Positions 687-60,838 of a stretch of 64,000 nt of DNA are shown here, in pieces; within the stretch, counting starts at the first letter, position 1, and each line of letters begins with the position of its first letter. The notes under the pieces were generated by a model. That model was not told where the DNA came from. It saw only the letters and a list, made by a program, of their open reading frames with translations, and searched no databases. The DNA is taken from positions 331,128 to 395,127 of IMG/VR virus record IMGVR_UViG_3300024252_000004, one strand, 5' to 3'. A program made the position numbers and the translations under genes.

Positions 687-694
687 TACTAATA
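687..694 (+). promoter_or_regulatory. TACTAATA putative late promoter element
   Basis: Recurrent motif directly after a stop codon, 49 nt before ATG 736. Confidence 0.55.
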
Positions 695-3451: not shown

Positions 3452-5053
3452 ATGGGAAAAGTTGTAAAGATTGGACCTGAAGCAAGAAAAGAAATGCTTC
3501 AAGGTGTAGATATTTTAGCAAACGCCGTTAAGGCCACTCTTGGTCCGCGAGGAAGAAACGTTGCTATCGAAAGGGAATGGGGTCACCCGCTTATTACAAA
3601 AGATGGTGTGACTGTAGCTCGACAGATCAGATTGGATGATAGAATTCAGAACATGGGAGCACAGTTGGTGCGTTCGGTTGCAGCCGCAGCAAATAGCGCG
3701 GCAGGAGACGGGACAACAACTGCAACTGTTCTCGCTCAGGCAATCTACTCCAAAGGCTTAGTTCTTGTAGACGAAGAGGGACTCAACCCTGTTCTTCTTA
3801 GACGCGGCATTGACCTTGCTGTGACAAAACTTTCAAGTAGACTGAAGGGCTTATCTGCATCTGTAAGCGATGAAGCAAGCATGAGAAGTGTTGCTGTAAT
3901 CTCTGCAAATAATGATAAGGTTCTCGGTGCCAAAATCGCAGAAGCTATCGCGGCAGTTGGTCAGCACGGAGTCATTTCCGTTGAGGAAGCGACTGGAAGA
4001 TCAACTGAGGTGTTCTACTCGGAAGGTATCAAGCTCGATAAGGGATGGACCTCTGAGCATTTCGTGACAAATTCTGCAAGATTTACGGCAGAATTTGATG
4101 ATTGTCTTATATTTCCTTATGATGGGGCGATTTCCAGCATCACTGATGTAAGGGAAATTTTTGAGGAATTAGCCGAGCAATCCAAACCCGTTCTTTTGGT
4201 TGTAAAGCAGATCACAGATGAAGCTATTGCTCATCTTGTCTACAACAAGATTCAGGGAAATATTAGAATCGCGGTAGTTCGTTCTCCTGGGTTTGGTGAT
4301 TCGAGACGTGCATTCCTCGAAGACCTTGCCATTGTTTCTGGCGGAAAGATGTTCTGTGATAATGACGGAATCGGTCTTGACGGAGCAACAGTTGCTGATC
4401 TTGGGACCGCACGCAGGGTCATCGTAAGCCAGAACAGCACAACTATAATTGAAGGTGGGGCAGATCCCAAAGATGTTGAGGCGAGAGCCATTCAGATTAA
4501 AGAGCAGCTTACTGCTGGTGGTCAACATGATTATCAGCTTGAGATTCTAAAAAGCAGACTTGCAAGAATCACTGGCTCGGCAGCGATTTTTAAGGTCGGC
4601 GGAAAATCTGAAGCTGAAATGAGAGAGAGAAAGGACAGAGTGGAAGATGCTATCAACGCTGTACGTTCAGCGCTTGAAGAAGGTGTAGTTCCCGGTGGTG
4701 GCTCCGCACTAATTCATGCCCTTCCAGTCCTTGACGAGATTGAGACAGATGGCCTTCTTCCTGAAGAGGTGGCCGGCATTGGAATTATCAGAGAGGCAGT
4801 TAAGGCCCCATTTTATCAGATTCTTGATAACGCCGGAGTCACTGGTGCTGATGATTTTGTTGAGCAGATTTTGAATTCTGATGAGCCAAGCGGTTATGAT
4901 GCTCTTAATCTTGAGTTTGTAACTAACATGTTAGACAATGGGATTATGGATCCTTGTAAAGTTGTAAGAAGCTCTTTGGAGCATGCTGCATCAGCCAGTG
5001 GAACACTGCTGACGACAGAGGTTGCAATTTACGAAACTGAAACGGAGAGATAA
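3452..5053 (+). CDS. groEL: chaperonin GroEL-like, paralog 1
   Basis: [40 protein letters not shown]; lacks GGM tail. Confidence 0.97.
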   Translation: MGKVVKIGPEARKEMLQGVDILANAVKATLGPRGRNVAIEREWGHPLITKDGVTVARQIRLDDRIQNMGAQLVRSVAAAANSAAGDGTTTATVLAQAIYSKGLVLVDEEGLNPVLLRRGIDLAVTKLSSRLKGLSASVSDEASMRSVAVISANNDKVLGAKIAEAIAAVGQHGVISVEEATGRSTEVFYSEGIKLDKGWTSEHFVTNSARFTAEFDDCLIFPYDGAISSITDVREIFEELAEQSKPVLLVVKQITDEAIAHLVYNKIQGNIRIAVVRSPGFGDSRRAFLEDLAIVSGGKMFCDNDGIGLDGATVADLGTARRVIVSQNSTTIIEGGADPKDVEARAIQIKEQLTAGGQHDYQLEILKSRLARITGSAAIFKVGGKSEAEMRERKDRVEDAINAVRSALEEGVVPGGGSALIHALPVLDEIETDGLLPEEVAGIGIIREAVKAPFYQILDNAGVTGADDFVEQILNSDEPSGYDALNLEFVTNMLDNGIMDPCKVVRSSLEHAASASGTLLTTEVAIYETETER

Positions 5054-5337
5054 TGGATGATTTTTTGCTGGTCAATGCAGGACTCAATCTTCAGAAGTTC
5101 GAGAACAATAAGCATTTCTCATTGGAAGAGCACCCTGAGATTATGGAAGCACTTAATGTATTTCCAAATGGGGAGATTTGCGGAATTCGACTTGAAGCAA
5201 TCGAAGAGGTCTTAAACGACACAGAAGTTGACAACATTCGCAATGAACTCAAGGCAGCCCCAAAGCATGTAGAGATTAGATCAGCAAGAGATTTCTTAAA
5301 GGTCATAGCATACTACATTGATATTGAAGAATATTGA
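5053..5337 (+). CDS. hypothetical protein
   Basis: TAATG overlap with groEL, GGAG RBS, 94 aa. Confidence 0.7.
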   Translation: MDDFLLVNAGLNLQKFENNKHFSLEEHPEIMEALNVFPNGEICGIRLEAIEEVLNDTEVDNIRNELKAAPKHVEIRSARDFLKVIAYYIDIEEY

Positions 5338-5353
5338 CCTTAGCAAATAGTTC

Positions 5354-5387
5354 AAAAGCCTGATAGCAATTTAGCTGTCGGGCTTTT
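5354..5387 (+). terminator. rho-independent terminator hairpin
   Basis: AAAAGCCTGATAGC-loop-GCTGTCGGGCTTTT inverted repeat after gene end. Confidence 0.75.
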
Positions 5388-5426
5388 GTCATTTCTAATA
5401 ATATAGTTTGTTTGATTGAGGTGAAC

Positions 5427-6986
5427 GTGCGTAAGCTTGCAGACTTAGAAGTTACAGAGAAGACAGATCCTGCTACCGGAAATAAAATCCGTATTAGCAC
5501 GACTGCTCGTCTTGCGTTGAGAATTATGTTTCCAAAGTTTACTGAAGAAAGGAATGCGAGACTAAATGATCGAATGGCATTCATGTTCAGTAATTCAGCA
5601 GGCAACGTTGTTCACCGTTTCAAATTAGGGAACAAAGATACCGGAGCATGGCGCCCAGCGGAACCAGATTCTGGTGAACAGAATAATAGAGAAGTTGCTG
5701 AAATTAGGTCAGGCCCAGGCGGAGACTTTTTCTTCATTTCTGCTATTAGGCAGGGATACATTGATATCTTAACATTACAAGATAATTGGAAGCAGGGAAA
5801 GCCTAATCAAGGTGGATCAAAAGGTGCTGGCGCAGGAGCCGGTGATGGAGATGTATCTTTGGCGAGTCTGAATATCGACATGAGTATATTCGGAGCTACT
5901 AATAAAACGAATTTGGACAGAAACAGGAGACATAACATGTCAGCATTGCGCATTCTTGCAGATTTAGCAAACAAGTTGGACAGTTTTGGTGAGACCAAGG
6001 CTGCTGATGAAGTAACCAAGATGATAGAGAAGAGAGCTAGGTGGCCTTTTGGAAAGGCGGACGAAGAGGAAGAATTTCCTGCTGCCCCTCCAGTCCCTAA
6101 GCCTCCTGTGTCTCCACAGTCTTCTCCATTTTTAAGAGGAACAATTCCTCCTGCGCCGCCTATGAACCCTGTTGTTACGACCAGTCCGGAAGGTTTCAGC
6201 GATGCTCCAGTTGCTGAACCAGCAGAGTCAAGAGTAGTTGGAAAGCTTGGTCCGATTAGGCCAGACAAAGATCCTTACTCTTACGAATTCCTTCCTTCCG
6301 AAGGTGTCTTCAGAGTTTCCAGCTACACTTATGGGCCAGGAGCGGCCCCTAACCCAAGGGCAGAGAGAGCCGTTGGCGCACATATTACAAGAGAAAATGC
6401 AAGAGCTTGGGCTGTATTGTCCGAGTATGTTCCAGAAGGGGACAAGTCCCCTTCCGAAGGGAGACATCTTCTCACAGAGTCTACAGGTGATCCTGCAAGA
6501 GACTGGAAAGAAGCACAGCTTCAGTTTGCTGGCTGGGTTAACTCAGGACACTTTGGTACTGAACTTCAGAAGAAGTTTAGACTTGCAGACCCGGGTATGC
6601 CAATGCGTCAGCTTATGGATGCAGAGCTTTCTCCAGAGAGTGCGGGATTCCTTGTTGAAAGGTTTGAGGCAATGATTGCTGGAAATGTTCTTTCGGATCT
6701 AAAAGATCCTGAGACTCTCCTCAGATATGCTCTTGAGCTTCAGAACTATGCTCATCTTGCTAACAGGGCAAGGGCAGTAGGTCAGCAGTCAATGAGAGAA
6801 TCTGAGACGGTCATGTCTCCGGGTGGATACCCATCATCATACCCATCATCATCAGAGGCTGAAGATTTCACACTGGCATCTATGGACTCAATAGAGGATA
6901 TAAGAAAGAAGGCATCTGCTAACGTAGATAGGCTTGCAGCACTTTTCACAGTCCCAGGTGGAAGCGGTCCTTTCGGAAGGGACTGA
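5427..6986 (+). CDS. hypothetical Pro/Gly-rich protein, candidate virion protein; internal in-frame start at 5937
   Basis: GTG start after GAGG; upstream TTCTAATA (5393); long ORF; internal TACTAATA + AGGAG + ATG. Confidence 0.75.
   Translation: MRKLADLEVTEKTDPATGNKIRISTTARLALRIMFPKFTEERNARLNDRMAFMFSNSAGNVVHRFKLGNKDTGAWRPAEPDSGEQNNREVAEIRSGPGGDFFFISAIRQGYIDILTLQDNWKQGKPNQGGSKGAGAGAGDGDVSLASLNIDMSIFGATNKTNLDRNRRHNMSALRILADLANKLDSFGETKAADEVTKMIEKRARWPFGKADEEEEFPAAPPVPKPPVSPQSSPFLRGTIPPAPPMNPVVTTSPEGFSDAPVAEPAESRVVGKLGPIRPDKDPYSYEFLPSEGVFRVSSYTYGPGAAPNPRAERAVGAHITRENARAWAVLSEYVPEGDKSPSEGRHLLTESTGDPARDWKEAQLQFAGWVNSGHFGTELQKKFRLADPGMPMRQLMDAELSPESAGFLVERFEAMIAGNVLSDLKDPETLLRYALELQNYAHLANRARAVGQQSMRESETVMSPGGYPSSYPSSSEAEDFTLASMDSIEDIRKKASANVDRLAALFTVPGGSGPFGRD
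5897..5904 (+). promoter_or_regulatory. internal TACTAATA element upstream of nested start 5937
   Basis: Exact motif 40 nt before in-frame ATG with AGGAG RBS (5925-5929). Confidence 0.55.
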
Positions 6987-8563
6987 TGGAGAAAAAGACG
7001 CCGGGGTTTTCATTAGATGATTTAGTTCCATCTGAAGAAGCTGCGTCAGGCATGCACGTTCCTGTAGGGGAGATGATGTTTGCAATCCCGAATAAAGCAG
7101 ATGATGAAGAGATTGAGGAGGAAGGTATGGAAAAGGAAGCCTTAGGCTTGACCAGTATGCCTCAATCTTTATATGGCGGCGAAGTTCTTGACCTGCCAGG
7201 AAGTCCTCAGCCTTCTGGACTCAGCAGAGAACAGGGCGAGGATGAAGAGACTGAATTTTTTGGAGCTAAAGAGGAGGGCGTAGATCTTCCTCCAGAACAT
7301 TACAAAACTCAGAAGAAACAGGGAATCTCAGAAGATGATGAAACAGATGAAGAATTCTTTGACTTCTTATTTACTAACAAAAGTCACAACTTCCTGAGAG
7401 AGGAATCAAACATGAGACACTTAATTGAGAAATTAGCCGAAGGGTTAGATAAGGTTGGAGAAAAGGACGCAGCACTTGTTGCATTGGCACTTACCGACGA
7501 TAGAATAAACTATTCGGAGTCTGTAAAACCTCCTGCACCTGATAATTCTGCCCCTGATTCGAGAAAAGATGAAATCTATAAAAAATTAGTATATGATTTT
7601 GGGATGATTACAGATTGGCTTTATCGCCCAGACGGTGAATTTACACCCAACAAATTAGAGAAAATGTGGGAAATGCTCAAGCAGCGCAAGCCTGCGCTGA
7701 GTGATGACAGAAAAGCGGAATTTATGAGTCTTGCAAAAGAGTGGGGGATGCAAGATCGTTATGGGGAAAGTTCTGCGGAAGAAGTTTCGACCGGCGAAGG
7801 AGTGCTTGCAAAGCCAGCAGAGCAGCCGTCTGGCGGAGTAACTCCGGTAGCTAAGCCAAGATCCGGCTGGGAAGGTTACTTCGCAAATGGTGGACCAAAA
7901 GGCATGAAAGCCGCCTGGGAAGCATGGGTGGCAGCCAACCCTAATCAGGGATATGATGCGTCTTTCTTGTCATGGGTTAAGTGGTACAGGAAGCAGGTTA
8001 CAGATAGAACCATTCCGTCTGGAGGTAATGTAGATGCTGTTCTTAGACTATTAGGAGGGGCTGCTCCCGCAGCGCCAGCCGCAAAAACAGATGAGGCAGC
8101 TAAGCCTGCTGAGGATACTGAGCCACCTATTGCAGAAGAGGGTAAGCCTCCAAGAGAGGCAATGGAAGAATACTTCAGAGCTATTTCTTCTAAGACAAGA
8201 GAAGCGAGAATCGCAGGTCCGTTAAGACTAAGAAACGCAAGAGTCAGAAGAAGAATCAGAAGACTCGGAGATCCAGCAGCGGCAGTAGAAGCTGTTCTCT
8301 CTTTCAGAGGCGGAGGCGATGTTGAGAAGGGTCTTGCGCTTTATGATAGTTATGATCAGACACAGACACCTGAAGGAACAGAAGAGCGCGGTGGCAAAAC
8401 CGTATCAACCTACAAGATGTCTGAGTTCCAAAACAAGGCAGTCAGTGATATCCTTACTCTGAAAGTAAGGGATTATAGAGCTGGCAGAGGACGTACCAGA
8501 AGAAGCGTGGCTTTTGAGGACAGACAAGATCAGCTTCTAAAGATGGCAGCAGAAAATTCCTAA
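6986..8563 (+). CDS. hypothetical acidic protein, candidate virion protein; internal in-frame start at 7412
   Basis: 525-aa ORF, TGATG overlap; internal TACTAACA + GAGG + ATG. Confidence 0.75.
   Translation: MEKKTPGFSLDDLVPSEEAASGMHVPVGEMMFAIPNKADDEEIEEEGMEKEALGLTSMPQSLYGGEVLDLPGSPQPSGLSREQGEDEETEFFGAKEEGVDLPPEHYKTQKKQGISEDDETDEEFFDFLFTNKSHNFLREESNMRHLIEKLAEGLDKVGEKDAALVALALTDDRINYSESVKPPAPDNSAPDSRKDEIYKKLVYDFGMITDWLYRPDGEFTPNKLEKMWEMLKQRKPALSDDRKAEFMSLAKEWGMQDRYGESSAEEVSTGEGVLAKPAEQPSGGVTPVAKPRSGWEGYFANGGPKGMKAAWEAWVAANPNQGYDASFLSWVKWYRKQVTDRTIPSGGNVDAVLRLLGGAAPAAPAAKTDEAAKPAEDTEPPIAEEGKPPREAMEEYFRAISSKTREARIAGPLRLRNARVRRRIRRLGDPAAAVEAVLSFRGGGDVEKGLALYDSYDQTQTPEGTEERGGKTVSTYKMSEFQNKAVSDILTLKVRDYRAGRGRTRRSVAFEDRQDQLLKMAAENS
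7372..7379 (+). promoter_or_regulatory. internal TACTAACA variant element upstream of nested start 7412
   Basis: One mismatch to TACTAATA, 40 nt before in-frame ATG with GAGAGG RBS. Confidence 0.45.
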
Positions 8564-8583
8564 GCCAATTTAGAATGGAGCAG

Positions 8584-8612
8584 AAACAAGGAGGGCTTAG
8601 CCTTCCTTGTTT
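8584..8612 (+). terminator. rho-independent terminator hairpin
   Basis: AAACAAGGAGGG-CTTAG-CCTTCCTTGTTT. Confidence 0.75.
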
Positions 8613-8626
8613 GCGTTAGAGCATAT

Positions 8627-8656
8627 TTTTCCAAATTTCCCACAGGGTGGTATAAG
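8627..8656 (+). promoter_or_regulatory. putative promoter, TTTCYA-N17-TATAAG class
   Basis: TTTTCCAAATTTCCCACAGGGTGGTATAAG; near-copy at 22238, same-spacing variant at 13509. Confidence 0.6.
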
Positions 8657-8729
8657 GGAGCATGTCCGTAGCTCTTAGTAGTTGCCTTGTATTCGCTTCG
8701 GTACTATTATCGCTCATGGAGGAATTTAC

Positions 8730-9740
8730 ATGTTGTTATCCGCAGATGTTGTAGTGGGGCTCGCTTGGGGCGATGAAGCAAAAGGAAAGATCACCTCAGC
8801 CTTGGCAGCTACAGGGCAGTACGACGCCGTGGCTCGCTGGGCCGGAGGCAATAACGCAGGCCATACGGTCTACGTCAATGGCGAAAAATACAAAACACAC
8901 CTTGTTCCAAGCGGCGTATTCCACGGAATGCTTTCCATCGTTGGTCCCGGCTGTGTATTGCATCCAGAAGAATTTGAAAAAGAATTGGCTTACCTCGCAG
9001 GACACGGATTCGATACCTCTCTTGTGAAGGTATCTCCGAATTGCCACATTGTTCAAGACGAGCATATTGAGTTTGACAAGCAGAACCTTGCAAAGAAGCT
9101 TGGCACAACCTCAAAAGGTATTGCACCGAGTTACGCAGCTAAGGCGGCAAGAACAGGTCTTCTTGCCAAAGACTATTACGAAGGCAGTGACATCCTATGG
9201 GACGGTCAGCTTAGCGGTGTATTATTGTGTGAAGGAGCGCAGGGGGCTTGGTTAGATATTGATCACGGGAATTATCCCTATGTGACCTCAAGCATTACAC
9301 TTGCCTATGGAGCTTGCAGTATAGGCTTCGCACCACAGCTCATTAAGAGCATCTGGGGCGCTGCCAAAATTTATGACACAAGAAGCGGAGAAGATCCTAT
9401 TTTTCCTGCGTCACTACTTGATGACCCTATGCTGTCAAAGGTTGGGGAAATTGGGGCCGAATATGGTGTGACCACAGGGCGCAGAAGAAAGGTAAATTGG
9501 CTTGATGTTGATATGCTGATTAAGTCTATCAATTTGACTGGATGCACACACGTTGTTGTTAGCAAATGTGATGTATTGGAAGAGGCCGGAGTTTACAGGA
9601 TGTATTGTAGAGGGATTCAGAACGAGCTTTCTGAGTTCGAAAGCATTACCGATATGACCGGAGTGCTGGAGACTCTTCTTAGAAAGAATTGTTCCCTTCT
9701 CAAGAGAGTGATCTTTTCCTCTTCACCGGAGAATATATGA
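8730..9740 (+). CDS. purA: adenylosuccinate synthetase (short form)
   Basis: WGDEAKGK, GGNNAGHT, EGAQG, DHGNYPYVTSS, TTGRRR, KCD; ATG 8730 follows GGAGG. Confidence 0.95.
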   Translation: MLLSADVVVGLAWGDEAKGKITSALAATGQYDAVARWAGGNNAGHTVYVNGEKYKTHLVPSGVFHGMLSIVGPGCVLHPEEFEKELAYLAGHGFDTSLVKVSPNCHIVQDEHIEFDKQNLAKKLGTTSKGIAPSYAAKAARTGLLAKDYYEGSDILWDGQLSGVLLCEGAQGAWLDIDHGNYPYVTSSITLAYGACSIGFAPQLIKSIWGAAKIYDTRSGEDPIFPASLLDDPMLSKVGEIGAEYGVTTGRRRKVNWLDVDMLIKSINLTGCTHVVVSKCDVLEEAGVYRMYCRGIQNELSEFESITDMTGVLETLLRKNCSLLKRVIFSSSPENI

Positions 9741-10573
9741 GTAAAAGAAGTATGTTGATATATCATGCCAATTGCCCTGACGGCTTTGGCGCGGCATATG
9801 CATTTTGGAAAAAATACGGATATGGTATTGATTACTGTGCAGTAAAGCATGGTGATCCGATACCGGATGATATTGACGACAGAGATATCTGGATAGTAGA
9901 TTTCTGTTTTAAGTTTCCAGAAATGGATGAAGTGATTGAAAGAGCTAAGAGCGTGGTCGTTATCGATCACCACATTACGGCTATGGAATCGATGGAGGGC
10001 GTTACTCGTCCGAATCTTGAAACCATATTTAAAATGGATAACTCAGGCGCGGTGTTGGCATGGAAATACCTTTTCCCTGACGAAGACGTTCCAAAGATTC
10101 TTCAGTACATTGAAGATAGAGATATTCATAAGTGGGAGCTAGAGGGTGCCGAAGCACTTTTGGCTAATCTTGATTCTAATGAAAAGAATCTTGAAATCTG
10201 GGATGATTTTGCTCAAGACATTGAGACCTCAAGAGGTTTGATGAATCAGATTAAGGGCGGAAGAATTCTTCTTGATTACAAAAAGGAGATCAGTGATTCC
10301 ATTAAGAGAGGCATGTATTACATGACTATCCGAGGAATTGAGTTCCCTGTCATTAACACCGCAGTGATATTCCGTGGAGACATCCTTTCGGAGATTGCTG
10401 ATAGTACAGATTTTGGCGTAGCGGCTGCTTATAATTTTGACGGAAAGCATTATGTCTTCTCGTTAAGGTCGAGAGGCGAAGTCGATGTTGCTAAGATTGC
10501 GGAATCGTTCCCCGGTGGTGGCGGGCACAAAGGAGCCGCAGGGTTTTCGGTCCTTACTATGGAGGACCTTTAG
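9737..10573 (+). CDS. DHH/DHHA1 family phosphoesterase
   Basis: YHANCPDG, VDF, IDHH, SLRS, GGGHKGAAGF; ATGA overlap with purA. Confidence 0.9.
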   Translation: MSKRSMLIYHANCPDGFGAAYAFWKKYGYGIDYCAVKHGDPIPDDIDDRDIWIVDFCFKFPEMDEVIERAKSVVVIDHHITAMESMEGVTRPNLETIFKMDNSGAVLAWKYLFPDEDVPKILQYIEDRDIHKWELEGAEALLANLDSNEKNLEIWDDFAQDIETSRGLMNQIKGGRILLDYKKEISDSIKRGMYYMTIRGIEFPVINTAVIFRGDILSEIADSTDFGVAAAYNFDGKHYVFSLRSRGEVDVAKIAESFPGGGGHKGAAGFSVLTMEDL

Positions 10574-28348: not shown

Positions 28349-28356
28349 TACTAATA
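28349..28356 (+). promoter_or_regulatory. TACTAATA putative late promoter element
   Basis: Exact motif, intergenic, 40 nt before ATG 28389. Confidence 0.55.
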
Positions 28357-28388
28357 AAAGTCGTTTCCTAGTTGAGGATCAATAAAAA

Positions 28389-29273
28389 ATGACTTTACTT
28401 CTTACAATGACAGAGAGTGATAGCTCAATTATATCTGGTGTACCAGAGTACGTTGAGTTTGAGACCAATGAACCGGCCACTGTTTTCTATACAGTGGACG
28501 GGACCGGACCAGATGCTGCGGATTTAATCGCGGTTGGCAAGGTATATCTTCCGACTCATGGTCAAGCATTCACTTTAAGTGCTGTGGCTATTTCTGGTTC
28601 AGAGGAATCTGATATCCTTGAGGAGGATTACTCAACGGATTCTTCGGCTTTGGCGAGGACGAGGAATGTAAGTGGTGAAGGTATCGTTATTCTTCCGGCA
28701 GGAGAGTATGACAATTTTGTTGATCACCTCTCTGAGGACACTAATGGTCAGGAGTCTCAAAGAACCACTATAGAGTTTTTAGATCTTATGATCATAACAA
28801 GCACTACCAATAGTCTTGGAGAGCCATTAGCCAGCGGTAGTTTGAGTACTGAAACGACTCATGATTTCATCAACATTCCAGATAGGAGTGGTGGCACGGA
28901 GATACCTGATATCTCTTCGGTTCATGACAGCGATTTTTTCCCTAATGCAAAGGTGATAGTTATCGATGGTTCGACTGAGGCTCTTTTAGATTCTCAAGCT
29001 GTTAGAATCATTAATAGGCCACACGGTACGATTGACCCATCGAGTAGTTTTTACAACGATCACATCATTGAGCGTCCATTGGTTTCTGGCAATTTTGTTA
29101 GAGCGATGTACAATCCGAAAACAGGGAAAGCGGTTTTTTATTATAGAGAGAGTCGAGACAATAGGTGGATTAAATCTGTTCAATCGGTTCAGCCAAAATG
29201 TATAAAAGCCGAGTCCAAACCGGGATTTGTTTTCAAGTGGATTGAGAGCAGATCGATGTCCAAGATTTATTGA
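28389..29273 (+). CDS. hypothetical protein with N-terminal Fn3-associated/chitobiase-like beta domain, candidate virion protein
   Basis: ATVFYTVDGTGP motif; follows TACTAATA. Confidence 0.6.
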   Translation: MTLLLTMTESDSSIISGVPEYVEFETNEPATVFYTVDGTGPDAADLIAVGKVYLPTHGQAFTLSAVAISGSEESDILEEDYSTDSSALARTRNVSGEGIVILPAGEYDNFVDHLSEDTNGQESQRTTIEFLDLMIITSTTNSLGEPLASGSLSTETTHDFINIPDRSGGTEIPDISSVHDSDFFPNAKVIVIDGSTEALLDSQAVRIINRPHGTIDPSSSFYNDHIIERPLVSGNFVRAMYNPKTGKAVFYYRESRDNRWIKSVQSVQPKCIKAESKPGFVFKWIESRSMSKIY

Positions 29274-32271: not shown

Positions 32272-35200
32272 ATGCACAAAATTGCTAATGAAGTTACTTT
32301 TGCAAATCAGCAAATGGTTGAAAGAATCTTTTCTCGCATGAGAGACGGAGAGTACGCAGATACGGTAGCTACTCTTTCAGCCATTCATGACCTAATGTCG
32401 CAGCAAGCAGACCTTAGCGTCATTGATGCGACCAAGGAAGTTATTGGAGACAATAACTTCGTTCAGGGATTTGCACGATACATTACACATTATATTGGAG
32501 AAGGACAGTTCAGGGGAGTACCTTTTGAAAGTCTGTCAGAATCTCTATATGCATTCAGAGCACCTGCGGCTATCCCTGAAGGGGAACAGGTTCCGGAGGC
32601 GGCGACTACAGAGCCGGCAGAAGAAGAAGGCTTAAGCAAGCCTGACTTTGCAGAAGACCTTGAGAGAATCAAGACGCAAAAATACCCTGAAGCTGAGAGG
32701 GAAAGGGTTATGATGTCCTTTAAGAACCTCGGCCTTCATTTAAAGAAGCTTCACGAAGCTACAGAAGAAGGTGATGTTGAGCTTTATGCTGAGCAAATCA
32801 GGGGAACTATTGAGTTCTTAGATTCTTTAGTTAAGTATGCCCCTCTTGACAAGAAGGATGAATCGGATCCGGATAGCAAGAAGAAAGGGCCTAGCAAAAA
32901 AAGGGGATCAAAAGTTGTTAAAGCTGGAGAGACGAATCTTTCAGAAGAAGATGTCGCAAACAGAATGGACACAAGGGTTCGTGTACAAGAGATTCCTGCA
33001 ACGTTGAGCATGGAGACTTTGGGGTCTCATGCAATTGTAAGGGGAATCGAAATTGTTTCCGAGACAGGTTTGACCACGGAAACCATCCGCCAGACAGAGG
33101 AGTCTCTTGTTCAGGTTATGAACAATGCAAAGAAAGCTTTTGTTCATTTTGAACAACTTACTTCTGGAATGATTGAACGGCATCGACAGACCAGAACAAA
33201 AGGTAAGGGCTCAGACAAAGCTGATTCAAAGGTTAGTAATAGCGTACTTATCGATTTTAACAATTTGATTTACGCAATCAAGGGTGTTGATCTTTTTGTT
33301 AAGAAAGCAATTAGGGCAGCAATTATGGATCCAGAGAATTCAATTTCTGGAGTGGAACTTGCTGGACTTAGAGATAAATTGCTTGTGCCACAATTTGTTG
33401 CGGATAAGGCGTTCTTCAGTGAGACAATTGTGCTTGGATTATCGTACCTTGCAGTTAGAGATGTAGGTCTGCTATACGCCGGTATAAAAACATGGGGAGA
33501 CTTCGAAGGCGACACATACTCTTCAGTTGTTGAGGACTATGGAAAGGATCTTCATGGCGGACGAAGCTTAGAAGATGATACTACTGAATACATTTTTAAA
33601 CTTATGTGGTCAAAGTTCAGAAGGATGCTCTCTGCGACATCAACAGATCAGGCAGTAAACGATTCAGATCCGATGAAGAACTTCATTAGTAATGTTTTAT
33701 TCCAGAAAGGCTTTGTTGCGCAAAACCTTAGAAGAGATCTTCGTTCATCTGAAAGCAGCAAGGTTAACATTGCTAAATGCCCCACATGTACTCGTCCAAT
33801 TAAATGGTCCGGCAAACCCCTTAAGGATTTGGATCTAATCCAGTCTAGAGGCGCATACCTTCCTATGTATTCTTTTGTAGGAAAGCGCTTAAAAGATGAT
33901 GGCCGAAAAACATCATTTATCATAACTGAGAGACACTTAGAGGAGGGAGGTCCTTATCCTGCTCCGGATTCTTCAAAAATTGGAAACGCTTCTCAGATGA
34001 ATGAGACTAAAGCTGATGGCTCTTTGACGAACAAAGCTAAGCTCCTAAAGAGGACTCGTTCTGTCATTGATAGCTACGAAGGTTCCAAAACATGGTCAGA
34101 AATCCTTGAGTTACTTTATTCCAATGAGCCTGCCGAGCATGAAGAAGGACTTCAGAGAAGAGCCGGAGCATTAGCTCATCTTGGCGCGGTACGGTTACGG
34201 CACAAAAGAAAGGGAGGCGCAGGCGTCCCAGTCATGACGGACATTAGTACGATCATGTATGCTTGCCCATTCCAGAAGGAAGAGGCAGAAACGGGATTTT
34301 CGAAAAGCGACATATTCAGTCCAAAAGATGAGATTACAAAAATTAAAACAGAGCTTCAGTATCCTGACGATCCAGAGACTCAAGCCGCTGTTGGTGCAAT
34401 TTTTGACAAAATTGATGAACTTAATCTGTCATTTGCAGAAGCTGTGATGAACGATCCGGATATCGAGGCTCTCATTCGTGGAGAACTCGAAGAAGCATTC
34501 GATCAGGCTTATGATCTTGCAGGCGTAGTTAGGGGCGAAGATGAAGCAGAAGAAGAGGGAGAGGTTGGTCCTGCATTTTCTCCATCTGGCTGTGGCTTGA
34601 AGTTGTCGCCTTACGAAGATGATCCGTCAAAGATGACTTATGGTTCCAATTCTAATCCAAATGTGTTACAGTATACATGGAACCCTCGTGAATTTGATGA
34701 AACACAAGAAGCTGCGGCACAGAAGAGCCTGTCTGGAGGATACAAGTTCTCTAAGACGATCTTTAGGTGTCCGGCAAGAATCGTTGATCCATCATCCACA
34801 GATCTTATAAAATATAAAAACGTTGCAATTCCGAAGTCTGGACCGTCTGGCATTGGGAGTGGAGCCTATGTTCCGCCTACAAACGCATCAGGATATGCGG
34901 CTTATGATGAGATCGAAAATGGGACTTTCTCTTACCTTGTATGTGGCGCCTCAACTTCCCTCTCCGCTTTTGATAAAACTTCTGGAGGAGAAGGCTCTAT
35001 CTATACCATTTTAAGAAACCTTCTTAATGTAATTAAGGGTTCCAGCGCAACAGGGGAGAGTGTTACTAACTCCCAGAAGAATGCAGCAAAAAACATAATC
35101 GACTTCCTTATTCTTGAAGGAATTGACTACATGGACCTCATCAAAGCATTAGAGGTTGCAGACGCTCCAGAGCCAGAACTTGCTACAACCGCCCGTTTGA

Positions 35201-38200
35201 AGAAATGCAGAATAAAAAAGATAGAAAAAATGCTCGTTACAGCAGCAAGACAGCTTCCGTCTCAGTTCTCTGAGATTGAAGAGCTTGTTCTTGTGTGTCC
35301 TCACGGTCATAGGTTTTCACTTAAGCAGTCTGTAGGGTTCAGCGAGACCCACGTTTCTGTAAGAATGTCGGGCGCCAATAAAGGATATGCTGCGGCCAAA
35401 GAACTTTATGCTTTGACCGGAATTGAAAGCCTTGAGGCTGCAAAAAGGATTGGAGTTATTGTTAGAGCTGTTGACGAAGAAGAGTTGAAGACTTTTGAGG
35501 ATATTGGTAGCGAGAATCACAGTGTTGAAGAGTTAGCATTTGTAATCCCTGATGAGTTGGGGAACCCAGTCAGATGGAAGTTTTCACCCCGTATTACTGA
35601 TCTTATCAAGAAGAATGCATTCTCTGAGTACCCTGGTGCTGGACAGGAAGATATTCCTTCATCAATCGAGTATTCAAAAGTGAAATTTGGTGGGCAATTT
35701 TTGGCGGACCTTATCAAGGAGGGGGCTGGTTCAGGGAGTGAGGAAGAAATCGCTGCTGGAAAACAAGCTGCTGCGGATTATCGCAGAGATGAAGATGCCG
35801 GAAGCGAAACTCTTTCCAGAGCAATCGAGGGCATTGACTCTAAGGACCTCGCGAGCAACATTGAGGCTTTGGCAAGATCCCTTAGGGGCGCTCTTAAGAT
35901 TGTAATCACTTGGAATAATAGAGCTATTGAGCCTGAGTTTTTCAACAAAGTTGTTGCAAACTCGGATTTCTCAATCGAAGGAGTACCCGAAGAAATTCTT
36001 AGTATCGATGGATTATTCTACACTGAAGATGACGGTTTGGACTCAGCAGCACTGAGCGCCGTATTAACAGCTTTCGCCCCAAGGCTCAAGACCTATATCG
36101 TAGCGACAAATGCTTTCCAAGGAGAGGACTACGTTGGTTCAGCAACAGCTTTAGCTACAGCGGCATTGGTTGATGCTGTAGTTCAAGTTGCAAATGATAC
36201 GGAACACGATATCGAATTCGATCTCGATCTCGACTCTGACAATACAGAATTTGAGTTTGTCTATGCAAAACTTGCTTCATTCTTTGAAGATTATAGAGCA
36301 GATTTTCAGAAGCTAATTCCTTACATCACTCATAGTGATGAAAGATATGTGGCTAAAGCGCAAGAGATTGCCTCTAAGACACCAGTTCTTTCAATTTTTT
36401 ACACGATTGCATCTTACCGCACCGAGAAAAAAGGTCAGGAGAGAACAAGACTTCGTGAAGCATACGGAAAGAAAATATTCTTGGTCGCATACGCAAGATA
36501 TCTTGCAAATGCAATCGCAGTTGTTTATAATGAATGCATGGCGCCAGGAAGATGTATTCCAGGGGCATACATCGGATATAACATTGGAGTAGATCTGTCT
36601 ACAACTGACAAAGTATTAGCTTTGACTAGTGGTGATCTCAGAATAATTGAAGATAACCCGAATCTTCGGGGTGCAAATCACGGGATTGTTCTCAGAAATG
36701 TTGTAGCAGCATATAATGGTATTATCGCAAGAATGTCTATTGCAAGAAATATGGCAATTTCTCCAATTGGTTTGGCCGAAGCTAAGAAAGAACTTCTTAG
36801 GCAGTCCGGAACATCTGGTGACCCGTTGGCTCATGCAGTTTTCTCTTCTGCTTTCCCAATGCAAACTGTTGATTTCGGAATGGAGAACCTTACTTATGGT
36901 TCAGGGAATATTCCAAATGCATTCGGCATTAGGGCTGGCAAAGGAAGAGCTTTACCTTCTGAGCTTCATGAGTCAGAAGAAGAAGGTGTTGAACCGGCAG
37001 TATTGCCGCCAGCAATGCTACCGGTAACAAGGAGGGACGGCTCCCCTGTTCTTGACAGAGCGGGGCAGCAGAAAGTCATTCCAGCATATCTTCATCCAGA
37101 TTCAGGTTTCGATAGTTCGAAATTCCAGATTGGCATGTGTATGGGTAAGACAGGCAAATCCCTTACTTGGCCTCTCGATCATGCAAGTGATTTCGTAGGG
37201 TTCCCGCTTCCATTCAACAGAGATAAAACTGCCACAGTAACAAGAGCGGCAGATGCTGCCGTTTATGATTTCAGATTCGTAATCGATATCGAAGGGGTAC
37301 CTCAAGATATTTCTTTCCTCTTTAGAAGAGGAAGAATGACAAAGGAGGAAGATGGGGAAAGAAAAAATAAGTATCTCCCAATTTTGCGAGAACTTTATTC
37401 TAAACTTGATACTTTTGAAGATCAAAGAGGTGATGCACTTGAGGATGCTAAGAATAGCGAAGAAGAGGATGCAATCAATAATCATTTTGATGACGCTATT
37501 AGAGAAACTCAGTCTGCTCTAAAGCAGATTCCTCTATTCATAAAAGCAGGAAAGTCTTATGTGAGAAATAAAGCTTCCCTCGGTTCTTCTGAGCCAAAAT
37601 GGATTTCCGAAGCTCATCCGACAGCACTTCTTGTAGCTCCGAATGAGGCTCTCAACCTTATCAAAAATGTTGAGAGATTCGCTGGCATGCTTTCTGTTGC
37701 TCCAAACCAAGAACTATTAGAAAGGTTTGTAATTCAGGTGTATGGACTTGGGGTTGTTAGGGATATTGTTCAAGAAGCACAGAACAAGTACACAGACGAA
37801 ATTGCCGAAATTAGGGCTGAAGATATTTTCGACACTCACATCGATGGAAACACTTCCTCTGGGAAAAAGATGCTTTCGCATATCAATAGTAGCCTTTCAA
37901 AGGTTTACTCTGAGCATCTTGGGCAGTACTATGATCTCATTCCTTCTGGCGCAGACGGAACCGGTTCTAACTTGGTATTGCTCGAAGCGTCTGTACCTTC
38001 GTTTAAGGAGAATAGAAGATCCGAATCCGGATTTGAAGTCGTCCCTGATGAAGGATTAGGAACACCACCTTCTATTGGCAAACTGGCATCAAGAATGAAT
38101 AAGAATAATTCAATCTCAGATTTCTTTGGACGTGGCGCTGAAGGTGATGTTGGCATGACTTATTTGCAGAAGGCTCAAGAGTCTATGATCGAATACGTTA

Positions 38201-38355
38201 AGGGGCATGCATCCGGGGAGCTTGGCTCCCACACAACGGAGGCGTCATTGAAGACCGAATATTTGAAGAAGATCGCTAAGAGGCGCAAGTCTTGGGAGCG
38301 TATGATGTTAACGATGGGTGAGGCCGACATAGAGGTCGATGACCTCGTCGGCTGA
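32272..38355 (+). CDS. giant hypothetical protein (2027 aa) with dispersed Cys knuckles
   Basis: Uninterrupted 6.1-kb ORF; CPTC, ACPF, GCG, RCPA, VCGA, CPHGH. Confidence 0.85.
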   Translation: MHKIANEVTFANQQMVERIFSRMRDGEYADTVATLSAIHDLMSQQADLSVIDATKEVIGDNNFVQGFARYITHYIGEGQFRGVPFESLSESLYAFRAPAAIPEGEQVPEAATTEPAEEEGLSKPDFAEDLERIKTQKYPEAERERVMMSFKNLGLHLKKLHEATEEGDVELYAEQIRGTIEFLDSLVKYAPLDKKDESDPDSKKKGPSKKRGSKVVKAGETNLSEEDVANRMDTRVRVQEIPATLSMETLGSHAIVRGIEIVSETGLTTETIRQTEESLVQVMNNAKKAFVHFEQLTSGMIERHRQTRTKGKGSDKADSKVSNSVLIDFNNLIYAIKGVDLFVKKAIRAAIMDPENSISGVELAGLRDKLLVPQFVADKAFFSETIVLGLSYLAVRDVGLLYAGIKTWGDFEGDTYSSVVEDYGKDLHGGRSLEDDTTEYIFKLMWSKFRRMLSATSTDQAVNDSDPMKNFISNVLFQKGFVAQNLRRDLRSSESSKVNIAKCPTCTRPIKWSGKPLKDLDLIQSRGAYLPMYSFVGKRLKDDGRKTSFIITERHLEEGGPYPAPDSSKIGNASQMNETKADGSLTNKAKLLKRTRSVIDSYEGSKTWSEILELLYSNEPAEHEEGLQRRAGALAHLGAVRLRHKRKGGAGVPVMTDISTIMYACPFQKEEAETGFSKSDIFSPKDEITKIKTELQYPDDPETQAAVGAIFDKIDELNLSFAEAVMNDPDIEALIRGELEEAFDQAYDLAGVVRGEDEAEEEGEVGPAFSPSGCGLKLSPYEDDPSKMTYGSNSNPNVLQYTWNPREFDETQEAAAQKSLSGGYKFSKTIFRCPARIVDPSSTDLIKYKNVAIPKSGPSGIGSGAYVPPTNASGYAAYDEIENGTFSYLVCGASTSLSAFDKTSGGEGSIYTILRNLLNVIKGSSATGESVTNSQKNAAKNIIDFLILEGIDYMDLIKALEVADAPEPELATTARLKKCRIKKIEKMLVTAARQLPSQFSEIEELVLVCPHGHRFSLKQSVGFSETHVSVRMSGANKGYAAAKELYALTGIESLEAAKRIGVIVRAVDEEELKTFEDIGSENHSVEELAFVIPDELGNPVRWKFSPRITDLIKKNAFSEYPGAGQEDIPSSIEYSKVKFGGQFLADLIKEGAGSGSEEEIAAGKQAAADYRRDEDAGSETLSRAIEGIDSKDLASNIEALARSLRGALKIVITWNNRAIEPEFFNKVVANSDFSIEGVPEEILSIDGLFYTEDDGLDSAALSAVLTAFAPRLKTYIVATNAFQGEDYVGSATALATAALVDAVVQVANDTEHDIEFDLDLDSDNTEFEFVYAKLASFFEDYRADFQKLIPYITHSDERYVAKAQEIASKTPVLSIFYTIASYRTEKKGQERTRLREAYGKKIFLVAYARYLANAIAVVYNECMAPGRCIPGAYIGYNIGVDLSTTDKVLALTSGDLRIIEDNPNLRGANHGIVLRNVVAAYNGIIARMSIARNMAISPIGLAEAKKELLRQSGTSGDPLAHAVFSSAFPMQTVDFGMENLTYGSGNIPNAFGIRAGKGRALPSELHESEEEGVEPAVLPPAMLPVTRRDGSPVLDRAGQQKVIPAYLHPDSGFDSSKFQIGMCMGKTGKSLTWPLDHASDFVGFPLPFNRDKTATVTRAADAAVYDFRFVIDIEGVPQDISFLFRRGRMTKEEDGERKNKYLPILRELYSKLDTFEDQRGDALEDAKNSEEEDAINNHFDDAIRETQSALKQIPLFIKAGKSYVRNKASLGSSEPKWISEAHPTALLVAPNEALNLIKNVERFAGMLSVAPNQELLERFVIQVYGLGVVRDIVQEAQNKYTDEIAEIRAEDIFDTHIDGNTSSGKKMLSHINSSLSKVYSEHLGQYYDLIPSGADGTGSNLVLLEASVPSFKENRRSESGFEVVPDEGLGTPPSIGKLASRMNKNNSISDFFGRGAEGDVGMTYLQKAQESMIEYVKGHASGELGSHTTEASLKTEYLKKIAKRRKSWERMMLTMGEADIEVDDLVG

Positions 38356-47533: not shown

Positions 47534-49922
<2,389 letters not shown>

Positions 49923-57111: not shown

Positions 57112-57361
57112 TACAACGGAAAATCAGGAAAGGTATGCGGATCTCACACTCAGGGATATTGAAAGTGCTGCTGCATTCTCATCTTGGCTGTCTCAACACT
57201 TAGTTACTTATGCTACTGGAACAGTAAGTAAAGAGCACTTGTTAATATTCCTTACATATATACAGGATCGTATTGACGAGACAGATTCGGCTGATGGCCT
57301 TATGTGGAAAAAAGCAATAGTCGATCTGAAAAGTAGATTAGGAGACGACAGTGGACTTTAA
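57095..57361 (+). CDS. hypothetical protein
   Basis: 88-aa ORF overlapping neighbours. Confidence 0.6.
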   Translation: MSVTINTTENQERYADLTLRDIESAAAFSSWLSQHLVTYATGTVSKEHLLIFLTYIQDRIDETDSADGLMWKKAIVDLKSRLGDDSGL

Positions 57362-58860: not shown

Positions 58861-59625
58861 ATGAACTTGGGAGAAACCCTATCATTAGTTGCACAGATTG
58901 CCGAAAGGTATTTGGTCGATAAGCCCTACATTGTTGGTGGCTTACCAAGAGACGTGTATCTGAAAAAGGAGATCAAGACAACTGATGTTGATTTGACAAC
59001 TAATTCTCCCGATGTCTTAAGGCTCGGCATCCTCGTGGCTAACGAAATGAATGCCACTTTCGAGCTATCAGATGATGGGCATTTGACCGCATTCACAGAT
59101 TCTTTTGATCTTGATTTCTCAAGTAACTTTATCTCTGAAGGCGTAGTTGAATACCTTGGTGATAAGCATCAAGAATATCACGAAGCATACAGTAGAGACT
59201 TCACGATCAATACCCTGCATCAGGATCTATTGACCAGAGAAATTGTAGATCCGACAGGGCAAGGTTTTGAAGACATCAAAAATAAGATCATCAGAACTCC
59301 TGTACCTCCACACATCACACTGGAAGATGATCCGAGGAGGATCTATCGTGCAGTGAATCTTGCTGCAAGATATGGATACAGAATTGATCCTACGATTGTT
59401 GAGTTCGTTCTTGAAAACCCAGAAATCTTTTCTTCAGAGAATGTAAAAGACAAGTACATCTCTGTTAAAATTGCGAAGGCACTCAAAGAAGATGCTGAGC
59501 TAACCCTTCACTTGTTAAGGGAGCTTGATCTTTTGAAGAATGTACCATTAAGTGGCTACTTCAAAGATGTGCTTATCTCTAAAAAACTTCTTGTTGAATA
59601 CTTGGGCGAGGAAAAAGATGATTAA
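58861..59625 (+). CDS. class II tRNA nucleotidyltransferase (CCA-adding / poly(A) polymerase family), short form
   Basis: YIVGGLPRD, DVD, RDFTIN, DPTG.G..DI, DDPRRIYRA. Confidence 0.9.
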   Translation: MNLGETLSLVAQIAERYLVDKPYIVGGLPRDVYLKKEIKTTDVDLTTNSPDVLRLGILVANEMNATFELSDDGHLTAFTDSFDLDFSSNFISEGVVEYLGDKHQEYHEAYSRDFTINTLHQDLLTREIVDPTGQGFEDIKNKIIRTPVPPHITLEDDPRRIYRAVNLAARYGYRIDPTIVEFVLENPEIFSSENVKDKYISVKIAKALKEDAELTLHLLRELDLLKNVPLSGYFKDVLISKKLLVEYLGEEKDD

Positions 59626-60532: not shown

Positions 60533-60540
60533 TACTAATA
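60533..60540 (+). promoter_or_regulatory. TACTAATA putative late promoter element
   Basis: Exact motif, intergenic, 33 nt before ATG 60566. Confidence 0.55.
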
Positions 60541-60565
60541 TTCATTGCTTTTTTTGGAACAATCG

Positions 60566-60838
60566 ATGAAAGAAACTATTATAAACAAATTAGATGACGA
60601 ACCGGTGACTATAGATCTTGAGGAAGAAGATGAAGAAGAAGAGCTTGATGTCAAAACTCAAGCTGAGGAATCTTCTAATATTCCTATAGATGGTAGTCCA
60701 GTGTATCCGCACATATATGTTGGCAATTCAGGTATTCCTGACATGGTCGATTATGATGAGAGCGGATACAGGGGAGATAATTATATGATTTGGCATGATA
60801 TTTTTCCAGATATTTCTGCCGGCAGCATTCATGGGTAA
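60566..60838 (+). CDS. small acidic hypothetical protein
   Basis: ORF after TACTAATA. Confidence 0.6.
   Translation: MKETIINKLDDEPVTIDLEEEDEEEELDVKTQAEESSNIPIDGSPVYPHIYVGNSGIPDMVDYDESGYRGDNYMIWHDIFPDISAGSIHG

What the first reader, a model, noticed from the sequence alone, without database searches (positions are those of the whole stretch)
5897..7500. Nested in-frame genes: internal promoter motif + RBS + ATG inside two consecutive long ORFs, each exposing the same N-terminal motif
Seen: in ORF 5427-6986, TACTAATA (5897) lies exactly 40 nt before an in-frame ATG (5937) with an AGGAG RBS. In ORF 6986-8563, TACTAACA (7372) lies exactly 40 nt before an in-frame ATG (7412) with a GAGAGG RBS. 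The same 40-nt spacing occurs at the ordinary intergenic site 28349->28389. Both junction peptides read like translated intergenic DNA (GATNKTNLDRNRRHN-M; LFTNKSHNFLREESN-M). Both short products begin with the same helical motif (MSALRILADLANKLDSFGETKAADEV; MRHLIEKLAEGLDKVGEKDAALV). Inference: each locus makes a long N-extended and a short isoform, possibly a modular way to load cargo into virions. A weaker third case is AGGAG+ATG 57843 in ORF 57351.
Basis: partly seen in the sequence, partly recalled or inferred. Interest (0 to 1): 0.8.

Follow-up and report, generated by a model that had tools for sequence, protein, structure and literature searches.

The report
Nested in-frame genes in jumbo phage
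Two neighbouring genes of an uncultured marine jumbo phage each carry, inside their reading frame, a conserved promoter-like DNA word, a ribosome-binding site and a start codon, so each probably makes a long and a short protein, which is a well-supported but not unprecedented way of encoding two proteins in one gene.

Summary
TACTAATA (5897), AGGAG and ATG 5937 lie in frame in ORF 5427-6986. TACTAACA (7372), GAGG and ATG 7412 lie in frame in ORF 6986-8563.

Independent assemblies show no stop or frameshift at either junction. Relatives 39-59% identical keep the ORFs uninterrupted.

The signals are conserved as DNA, not as peptide:
- GCTACTAATAAAA is the longest invariant nucleotide run in the ORF1 codon alignment.
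- AGGAG survives an Arg-to-Ser change.
- The internal Met is present in every homologue examined.

TACTAATA also sits in conserved noncoding positions 30-55 nt upstream of other genes, including the only minus-strand gene and directly after terminators. It therefore behaves as a promoter element.

More distant relatives encode the same modules as separate genes. One has a stop at the junction. One has a free-standing short-form gene behind TACTAATA.

Best reading: nested 3'-coterminal transcripts give long and short isoforms. This is inferred; no RNA or protein data were available.

Not supported:
- the "exact 40 nt" rule;
- virion cargo loading;
- the third case at 57843.

Protein function is unknown. 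This is a new member of a known kind.

The parts
5353..5388 (+). Hairpin terminator after the GroES-like gene. It is the upstream boundary of the ORF1-ORF2 unit.
   Evidence: 15-bp stem followed by a T run. (dG -24 kcal/mol; positionally conserved hairpins in L007, L008, L009, L016, L017 and L021).
5393..5400 (+). TTCTAATA, a one-mismatch variant of the promoter-like word, 34 nt before the GTG start of the long ORF1.
   Evidence: The same variant lies directly after the terminator in L007 and L017. L008 has the consensus TACTAATA at this place.
5427..6986 (+). ORF1 long form, 519 aa: N-terminal alpha/beta domain A (about 5427-5800), a Gly-rich linker, the junction, a helical hairpin, a Pro-rich linker, domain C and a conserved C-terminal GPFGRD.
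   Evidence: Domain boundaries come from the AlphaFold model of orthologue P0003.
5895..5907 (+). Internal promoter-like word GCTACTAATAAAA (core TACTAATA at 5897-5904), read as Ala-Thr-Asn-Lys.
   Evidence: It is the longest invariant nucleotide run in the 4-way codon alignment. It is present in 8 of 10 lineages examined.
5925..5929 (+). Shine-Dalgarno AGGAG, 7 nt before ATG 5937.
   Evidence: AGG AGA is kept in four orthologues. L009 and L021 have AGG AGT, so the residue changes from Arg to Ser while AGGAG is kept.
5937..6986 (+). ORF1 short form, 349 aa, beginning with the helical motif MSALRILADLANKLD.
   Evidence: Met171 is invariant. A Met is present at this place in all 17 family members examined. 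Free-standing homologues P0089 and P0148 start here.
6986..8563 (+). ORF2 long form, 525 aa. Its start overlaps the ORF1 stop (TGATG). The N-terminal 142 aa are an acidic region that is conserved in sequence but predicted disordered.
7372..7379 (+). Internal promoter-like word TACTAACA, read as (Phe)-Thr-Asn-Lys.
   Evidence: TACTAATA is at the same place in L008, L009, L016, L018 and L023. It is shifted about 36 nt upstream in L017 and absent in L007 and L021.
7398..7404 (+). Shine-Dalgarno-like GAGAGGA, 7-8 nt before ATG 7412.
7412..8563 (+). ORF2 short form, 383 aa, beginning MRHLIEKLAEGLDKVGE.
   Evidence: Met143 is invariant in 7 of 7 homologues.
8584..8612 (+). Hairpin terminator after ORF2. 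It is the downstream boundary of the unit.
   Evidence: dG -21.7 kcal/mol; comparable hairpins follow ORF2 in L007, L008 and L017.
687..694 (+). Intergenic TACTAATA, 49 nt before ATG 736.
   Evidence: It is conserved at the orthologous noncoding place in L007, L008, L009 and L016.
28349..28356 (+). Intergenic TACTAATA, 40 nt before ATG 28389.
60533..60540 (+). Intergenic TACTAATA between ORFs 59552-60529 and 60545-60838.

Best explanation
ORF1 and ORF2 form one transcription unit bounded by hairpin terminators. Each is a real, uninterrupted gene that also contains a second in-frame gene. In the disordered linker between the N-terminal module and the shared core lie a phage promoter-like word (TACTAATAW), a Shine-Dalgarno sequence and an ATG. 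All three are written in codons and kept by selection on the DNA.

The likely outcome is three nested transcripts with a common 3' end:
- One starts at the weaker variant word at 5393. It gives long ORF1 (GTG start) and, by coupling across the TGATG overlap, long ORF2.
- One starts just downstream of 5904. It gives short ORF1 plus long ORF2.
- One starts just downstream of 7379. It gives short ORF2.
The internal SD-ATG could also be used on the longer transcripts.

Long and short forms share the helical hairpin and the C-terminal domain. They therefore probably assemble together, with the N-terminal module (domain A, or the acidic tail of ORF2) present in a minority of subunits.

Shown: ORF continuity, conservation of the word, the SD and the Met at nucleotide level, the word's position upstream of other genes, and split or free-standing versions in relatives. 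Inferred: that the word is a promoter, that both isoforms are made, their ratio, co-assembly, and any biochemical function.
For: - ORF continuity: four independent assemblies show no indel. All close orthologues are single ORFs.
- DNA-level selection: the 13-nt GCTACTAATAAAA is the longest invariant run. Identical codons occur in 9 of 12 junction columns against 6 of 78 elsewhere, p = 1.3e-6. AGGAG is kept through an Arg-to-Ser change in L009 and L021.
- The word is kept when the peptide changes: L023 keeps TACTAATA by an extra Thr codon although its Ala codon is GCA. L017 ORF2 has the word moved about 36 nt.
- Linker length between the word and the ATG is constant at 40 nt in six ORF1 lineages, while other linkers vary freely.
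- The internal Met is invariant.
- Promoter-like behaviour: TACTAATA is conserved in noncoding DNA upstream of the 316-aa gene, upstream of the only minus-strand gene in five relatives, directly after terminators, and upstream of the free-standing short-form gene in L020. In 198 kb there are 12 intergenic hits and 4 antisense coding hits, and 10 of the 13 sense coding hits are these two junctions.
- Terminators bound the unit on both sides.
- The junction is a predicted disordered linker between confident domains.
- Relatives encode the modules separately: L019, L020, L021, and many standalone A-domain and B-helix-C proteins.
Against: - No transcript 5' ends, ribosome profiling or peptides exist for this uncultured phage, and no RNA run was listed.
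- The word does not resemble a sigma-70 -10/-35 pair, and the polymerase that would read it is unknown.
- One ORF1 orthologue (L016) and two ORF2 orthologues (L007, L021) lack the word while keeping the Met. The promoter is therefore dispensable in some lineages.
- The 383-aa 'short' protein found in public data (P0006) is only a product of contigs that begin 27 nt upstream of the ATG. It is not evidence for the isoform.
Confidence: 0.75

Rival explanations
1. The word is not a promoter but an RNA-level leader element, such as a translational operator, a binding site for a phage regulator or a processing site. It marks the 5' region of cistrons. Short isoforms would still arise, but by internal initiation or processing of the long mRNA rather than from their own transcripts.
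For: The word is always in sense orientation 30-55 nt before start codons. That fits a leader element as well as a promoter. No -35-like partner is conserved upstream.
Against: In the window, L007, L008 and L017 the word or its variant begins within about 5-10 nt of a strong terminator hairpin. No room is left there for another promoter. The divergent minus-strand gene needs a promoter in just this place.
Confidence: 0.13
2. The internal words are promoters that serve only the downstream genes, as operon-internal boosters. The internal Met and SD-like codons would be kept for protein reasons, and no short isoform would matter.
For: Internal promoters that feed downstream genes are common. ORF2 and later genes do lie downstream. 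Conserved TSSs inside genes are known in bacteria (PMC4161247, abstract).
Against: AGGAG is kept across a residue change, and its spacing to the ATG is fixed at 7 nt. The Met is invariant in all family members. Homologues exist as separate genes starting at exactly this Met. A terminator follows ORF2, so the second internal promoter could feed only ORF2's own 3' part.
Confidence: 0.07
3. The conservation is at protein level. ATNK / FTNK would be a cleavage or docking motif, and the long proteins would be cut there, for example by the HExxH domain present in relatives.
For: The peptide A-T-N is conserved widely. In relatives a HExxH domain lies directly upstream of it.
Against: Synonymous positions are invariant although pairwise same-codon fractions elsewhere are only 0.37-0.52. 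The same 8-mer is conserved in noncoding DNA. L023 and L017 keep the DNA word while changing the peptide or its position. The window protein lacks the HExxH domain.
Confidence: 0.03
4. Artefact or chance: a lost stop codon in the assembly, or a fortuitous 8-mer plus ATG.
For: The window-only count of the 8-mer is weakly significant (6 against 2.7 expected; 7 of 100 shuffles reach 6).
Against: Independent assemblies agree. Uninterrupted orthologues and nucleotide-level conservation across 8-10 lineages are documented.
Confidence: 0.02

Closest known systems
Tn5 transposase / inhibitor (Tnp/Inh): two in-frame proteins from one ORF, the shorter from its own promoter and start codon inside the coding region (from my own knowledge, not checked here)
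   Same: One ORF gives two products that share a C-terminus. The short one lacks the N-terminal module and appears to have its own promoter-like element and start inside the gene. Long and short forms are expected to interact.
   Different: Here the setting is a phage with two consecutive genes. The promoter word is a phage-clade-specific 8-9-mer that is also used in intergenic regions. The proteins are unrelated and of unknown function. No expression data exist.
Phage nested in-frame genes made by internal translation initiation: lambda C/Nu3 and P2 gpO (protease-scaffold), T7 gene 4A/4B, phiX174 A/A*, T4 gene 49 (from my own knowledge)
   Same: There is an N-terminally extended form and a core form of one protein. 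The internal SD and ATG lie at a domain boundary. In relatives the extension carries a HExxH (protease-like) domain, which recalls C/Nu3.
   Different: The genes are not in a head-morphogenesis module but between GroEL/GroES and a PurA-like gene. No similarity to any known scaffold or protease family was found. A conserved promoter-like word accompanies the internal start. The window's own protein has lost the HExxH domain.
Genome-wide in-frame internal starts in bacteria (retapamulin Ribo-seq, Meydan et al., bioRxiv 10.1101/520783, abstract) and conserved intragenic TSSs (PMC4161247, abstract)
   Same: The general phenomenon is the same: alternative N-terminal proteoforms and transcription starts inside genes.
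   Different: Those cases were found by experiment. This one is inferred from conservation alone, but with unusually clear nucleotide-level constraint on three separate signals.
T4-type late promoter TATAAATA: a single 8-bp A/T-rich -10-like element without a -35 (from my own knowledge)
   Same: It is an 8-9 bp A/T-rich word with no conserved upstream partner. Its distance to the start codon would suit a short leader.
   Different: The sequence differs at two positions. TATAAATA itself is not placed upstream of genes in these genomes. No gp55-like factor was looked for or found in the 64 kb.

Membership tests
In-frame nested genes (N-terminal proteoforms from an internal start) | One uninterrupted ORF spans both products | tested here: met
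   Four independent assemblies show no indels. Orthologues are uninterrupted.
In-frame nested genes (N-terminal proteoforms from an internal start) | An internal in-frame start codon with a ribosome-binding site, conserved among orthologues | tested here: met
   Met171 and Met143 are invariant. AGGAG and GAGG lie at 5-8 nt, and AGGAG is kept through an Arg-to-Ser change.
In-frame nested genes (N-terminal proteoforms from an internal start) | Both protein products are detected | not testable with these tools
   The phage is uncultured. No RNA run was listed and no proteomics data are available.
In-frame nested genes with their own internal promoter (Tn5 Tnp/Inh type) | A transcription start inside the coding region upstream of the internal start codon | tested here: inconclusive
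   A promoter-like word is conserved there. The same word stands upstream of other genes, after terminators and before the divergent gene. No 5'-end data exist.
Lambda C/Nu3-type protease-scaffold nested pair | An N-terminal protease domain in the long form | tested here: not met
   The window's ORF1 has no HExxH domain. Relatives have HEMGH but no significant match to any protease family or fold.
Lambda C/Nu3-type protease-scaffold nested pair | Location in the head-morphogenesis module (portal - protease/scaffold - capsid) | tested here: not met
   The neighbours are GroEL, GroES-like, PurA-like, DHH, IMPDH-like, AAA_5 and peptidase M16.
Sigma-70 promoter | TTGACA / TATAAT hexamers at 16-18 bp spacing | tested here: not met
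   There are no sigma-70-like sites at 5860-5935 or 7335-7410, and the scan shows no excess over shuffles. No conserved -35 region was seen in 30 aligned sites.
T4-type late promoter | TATAAATA upstream of late genes | tested here: not met
   The word here is TACTAATAW. TATAAATA occurrences all lie inside genes, not upstream of starts.
ParE/RelE-like fold (domain A) | Significant structural similarity to ParE/RelE toxins | tested here: inconclusive
   The best Foldseek PDB hits are ParE chains, but at E = 0.3-1.8 and TM 0.46-0.55 on about 100 columns. The profile search against PDB sequences was negative and Pfam was negative.

The most novel reading that the evidence does not exclude
A whole clade of uncultured marine jumbo phages uses a private promoter word, TACTAATAW. 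In two adjacent genes this word, with its leader and start site, has been kept inside the reading frame after once-separate genes were fused. The former intergenic spacer is now translated as a disordered linker. This lets the phage set the ratio, and perhaps the timing, of a core protein and its N-terminally 'armed' version. Related genomes show every stage of the series: separate gene with promoter, adjacent split genes, and fused with live internal signals.
Probability: 0.45. Interest if true: 0.6.

Novelty: new member of a known kind. Interest (0 to 1): 0.45.

Why it matters
- It gives a concrete, testable promoter word (TACTAATAW) for a lineage of 400-kb marine phages that has no cultured member and no known transcription signals.
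- It shows that standard gene calling misses two proteins here. It also offers a clean natural series of gene fusion and fission with the expression signals retained.
- For annotation, it argues for screening phage ORFs for conserved internal promoter + SD + ATG triplets at domain linkers.
- It does not by itself reveal a new mechanism: in-frame nested genes, some with internal promoters, are long known.

Tried and rejected
- DNA and protein searches of the isolate-phage collection found nothing for the two ORFs. The DnaE-like polymerase finds only distant hits, so no cultured relative can be used.
- Scans of IMG/VR and JGI metagenomes with the proteins or the profile returned only the same phage, plus one distant TARA locus. 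In that locus only domain A is recognisable, as a standalone 155-aa ORF.
- Pfam, PHROGs and NCBIfam gave no family for either ORF or for their domains.
- AlphaFold models searched against PDB and BFVD gave no significant fold match. The ESM Atlas gave nothing useful. The ORF2 model has low confidence.
- No RNA sequencing run was listed, so TSS mapping could not be done.
- A literature search for the 8-mer found nothing relevant.
- P0006, a 383-aa protein identical to the ORF2 short form, looked like independent support. It comes from contigs that begin 27 nt upstream of the ATG, so it is an artefact.
- I considered a T4-like late promoter and rejected it.
- I rejected the third candidate at 57843.
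Full report
**What is in the sequence.**
- The window is the last 64 kb of a 395-kb viral contig from seawater metagenomes. Almost all genes are on the + strand.
- ORF1 (5427-6986, GTG start, 519 aa) and ORF2 (6986-8563, 525 aa, start overlapping the ORF1 stop) follow GroEL (3452-5053) and a GroES-sized gene. They precede a PurA-like gene and a DHH phosphoesterase.
TACTAATA is at 5897, AGGAG at 5925 and ATG at 5937. TACTAACA is at 7372, GAGG at 7400 and ATG at 7412. Both starts are in frame. The intergenic pair 28349 to 28389 has the same 40-nt spacing.

**No assembly error.**
- Three IMG/VR contigs and one JGI contig carry identical genes.
- Contigs from four further public runs cover 5300-8700 with no insertion or deletion. 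They show only four substitutions, at 6120, 6165, 6203 and 6657, none near a junction.
- Orthologues 39-59% identical are also single ORFs.

**The signals are conserved as DNA.** I fetched the DNA of orthologues from other metagenomes: L007, L008, L009, L016, L017, L018, L021, L022 and L023.
- In ORF1 the codons for Ala-Thr-Asn-Lys are GCT ACT AAT AAA in all four sequences of the first comparison. The resulting 13-nt GCTACTAATAAAA is the longest invariant nucleotide run in the whole codon alignment. The next longest runs sit at and just after the internal ATG.
- In a five-way alignment, 9 of 12 invariant degenerate codon columns between 5895 and 5972 are identical in all five sequences. Elsewhere the count is 6 of 78 (Fisher p = 1.3e-6). 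Pairwise same-codon fractions elsewhere are only 0.37-0.52, and GCT, ACT and AGG are not dominant codons.
- The Shine-Dalgarno sequence is AGG AGA in most orthologues. In L009 and L021 it is AGG AGT, so the residue changes from Arg to Ser while AGGAG and its 7-nt distance to the ATG are kept.
- In L023 the Ala codon is GCA, yet an extra ACT codon restores TACTAATA.
- In ORF2 the word lies at the same place in the window, L008, L009, L016, L018 and L023. It is shifted about 36 nt upstream in L017 and missing in L007 and L021.
- The internal Met is invariant in both families.
- The peptide between the word and the Met varies in sequence. In ORF1 its length is fixed, at 40 nt in six lineages, although other linkers of the protein vary freely in length.

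**The word behaves as a promoter element.**
- TACTAATA is conserved in noncoding DNA at orthologous places. One is upstream of the 316-aa gene (window 687; also L007, L008, L009, L016). Another is upstream of the only minus-strand gene of the region in L007, L008, L009, L016 and L023. It also lies upstream of an extra gene in L008 and upstream of a free-standing short-form homologue in L020.
- In 198 kb of these genomes there are 12 intergenic hits, in about 8% of the sequence. There are 13 hits in the sense strand of coding sequence, of which 10 are the two junctions. Only 4 are antisense.
- Distances to the start codon are 30-55 nt. The base after the 8-mer is always A or T, and no -35-like partner is conserved.
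- It is neither a sigma-70 pair nor the T4 late word.
- Directly after the terminator that follows the GroES-like gene stands a one-mismatch variant, TTCTAATA at 5393, 34 nt before the ORF1 start. The same is true in L007 and L017, and L008 has the consensus word there. With the hairpin at 8584-8612 this defines a unit with one upstream and two internal promoter-like sites.
- One-mismatch variants also precede other genes at similar distances: 20850, 32217, 53251 and 56363.

**A modular family with movable gene borders.**
- A profile search of 1.8 billion representative proteins found 167 relatives. Many are standalone A domains of 110-150 aa. Many others begin with a second domain (B) that carries HEMGH and continue through the helix and the C domain. 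A few begin exactly at the helix (P0089, P0148).
- In L021, A is a separate gene. The B-helix-C gene still carries the internal TACTAATA, AGGAG and ATG.
- In L019 a stop codon and a 27-nt spacer with its own SD stand at the junction. This gives a 301-aa gene and a 309-aa gene.
- In L020 the helix-C gene stands alone, 55 nt behind TACTAATA.
- The window and L007 have lost domain B.
- In the distant TARA locus only domain A is recognisable, as a separate 155-aa ORF.

**The proteins.**
- The AlphaFold model of orthologue P0003 has confident domains: A (5-115), B (148-295), a helical hairpin (307-345) and C (420-610). The junction (300-305) and a Pro-rich segment (350-404) are disordered.
- The ORF2 model is poor. 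Its N-terminal 138 residues are predicted disordered although they are the best-conserved part of the sequence.
- No family or fold was identified. ParE-like hits for domain A are not significant.
- The two short products begin with similar helices (LxxLAxxLDKxG). A profile-profile comparison gives P = 2e-4 and probability 47%, which is suggestive rather than proven.

**Third case.**
- ORF 57351-58856 belongs to a large family found in huge-phage contigs.
- The Met at 57843 is present in about 15 of 24 homologues and is mostly Ile in the others. No TACTAATA precedes it. I do not count it.

**Mechanism and rivals.**
- Best reading (about 0.75): nested transcripts with a common 3' end, plus internal initiation, give a long and a short isoform of each protein. 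The two share the helical hairpin and the C domain and so probably co-assemble. The weaker start signals of the long forms suggest that the short forms are the more abundant. Those signals are the variant word and a GTG start (TTG in L007).
- Rivals: the word is an RNA leader element rather than a promoter (0.13). The word is a promoter serving only downstream genes (0.07). The conservation is a peptide motif or cleavage site (0.03). The finding is an artefact or chance (0.02).
- Virion cargo loading is not supported by gene context or by any similarity.

**Comparison with known systems.**
- In-frame nested genes are classical: Tn5 Tnp/Inh with an internal promoter, lambda C/Nu3, T7 4A/4B and phiX174 A/A* (my own knowledge). 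Internal in-frame starts are now known to be common (10.1101/520783).
- This case works like those systems. It is a new member of that kind, in unknown proteins of an uncultured phage clade, with an uncharacterised promoter word written into codons.

**Limits.**
- No expression data of any kind were available.
- The identity of the polymerase or sigma factor, the host, and the biochemical function of both proteins remain unknown.

Noticed in passing
window 3452-5053, 5053-5337 and 48252-49922: The 64-kb window holds two GroEL-type chaperonin genes (Pfam Cpn60_TCP1, PHROG 5725). A 94-aa GroES-sized gene follows the first one. The GroEL-GroES-ORF1-ORF2-PurA order is conserved in all relatives fetched.
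   Followed up: partly
window 8682-9740 and 9689-10573: A short (352 aa) adenylosuccinate-synthetase-like gene. PHROGs labels it as the PurZ-type family, but it scores far below the NCBIfam PurZ cut-off (91.6 against 300 bits) and closer to PurA. A DHH/DHHA1 phosphoesterase follows it. Whether this phage modifies its adenine is open.
   Followed up: partly
window 5800-5896, compared with P0003, P0004, P0005, P0013 and P0014: Relatives carry a domain of about 150 aa with HEMGH...NPFPGGE (zincin-like) between domain A and the junction. The window phage and L007 have lost it and keep only a Gly-rich linker.
   Followed up: partly
L019 4068-5930: In the split version, the upstream gene ends with a helix resembling the motif that also begins the downstream gene. 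The helix therefore seems to be present twice, once on each side of the stop.
   Followed up: no
window 5393, 20850, 32217, 53251, 56363: One-mismatch variants of TACTAATA stand 34-59 nt before the starts of ORF1, ORF 20909, the 2027-aa ORF 32272, ORF 53290 and ORF 56404. The true consensus may therefore be looser, about TAYWAATA.
   Followed up: partly
window 32272-38355 and 39786-44561: A 2027-aa ORF has no PHROG match at all. A 1591-aa ORF has a DnaE-like (Pol III alpha) C-terminal half, with further domains fused at its N-terminus.
   Followed up: no
window 57351-58856: This 501-aa protein of unknown function has more than 260 homologues of similar length, many on contigs of 200-420 kb. 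It is a widely conserved huge-phage gene.
   Followed up: partly
P0068 and other hits: Domain A occurs as a free-standing small protein in dozens of 50%-identity clusters. It also occurs as tandem A-A proteins, or at the C-terminus of other proteins. It has no Pfam family.
   Followed up: partly
L141 and L142 (about window 7385): Two contigs from different data sets both begin 27 nt upstream of ATG 7412, just after the internal word. Other assemblies break nearby, between 7147 and 7449. This may reflect strain microdiversity around the junction.
   Followed up: no
window 1-64000: GC skew is positive in every 2-kb bin (0.05-0.23), with nearly all genes on one strand. No tRNA genes are present in this 64 kb.
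   Followed up: no
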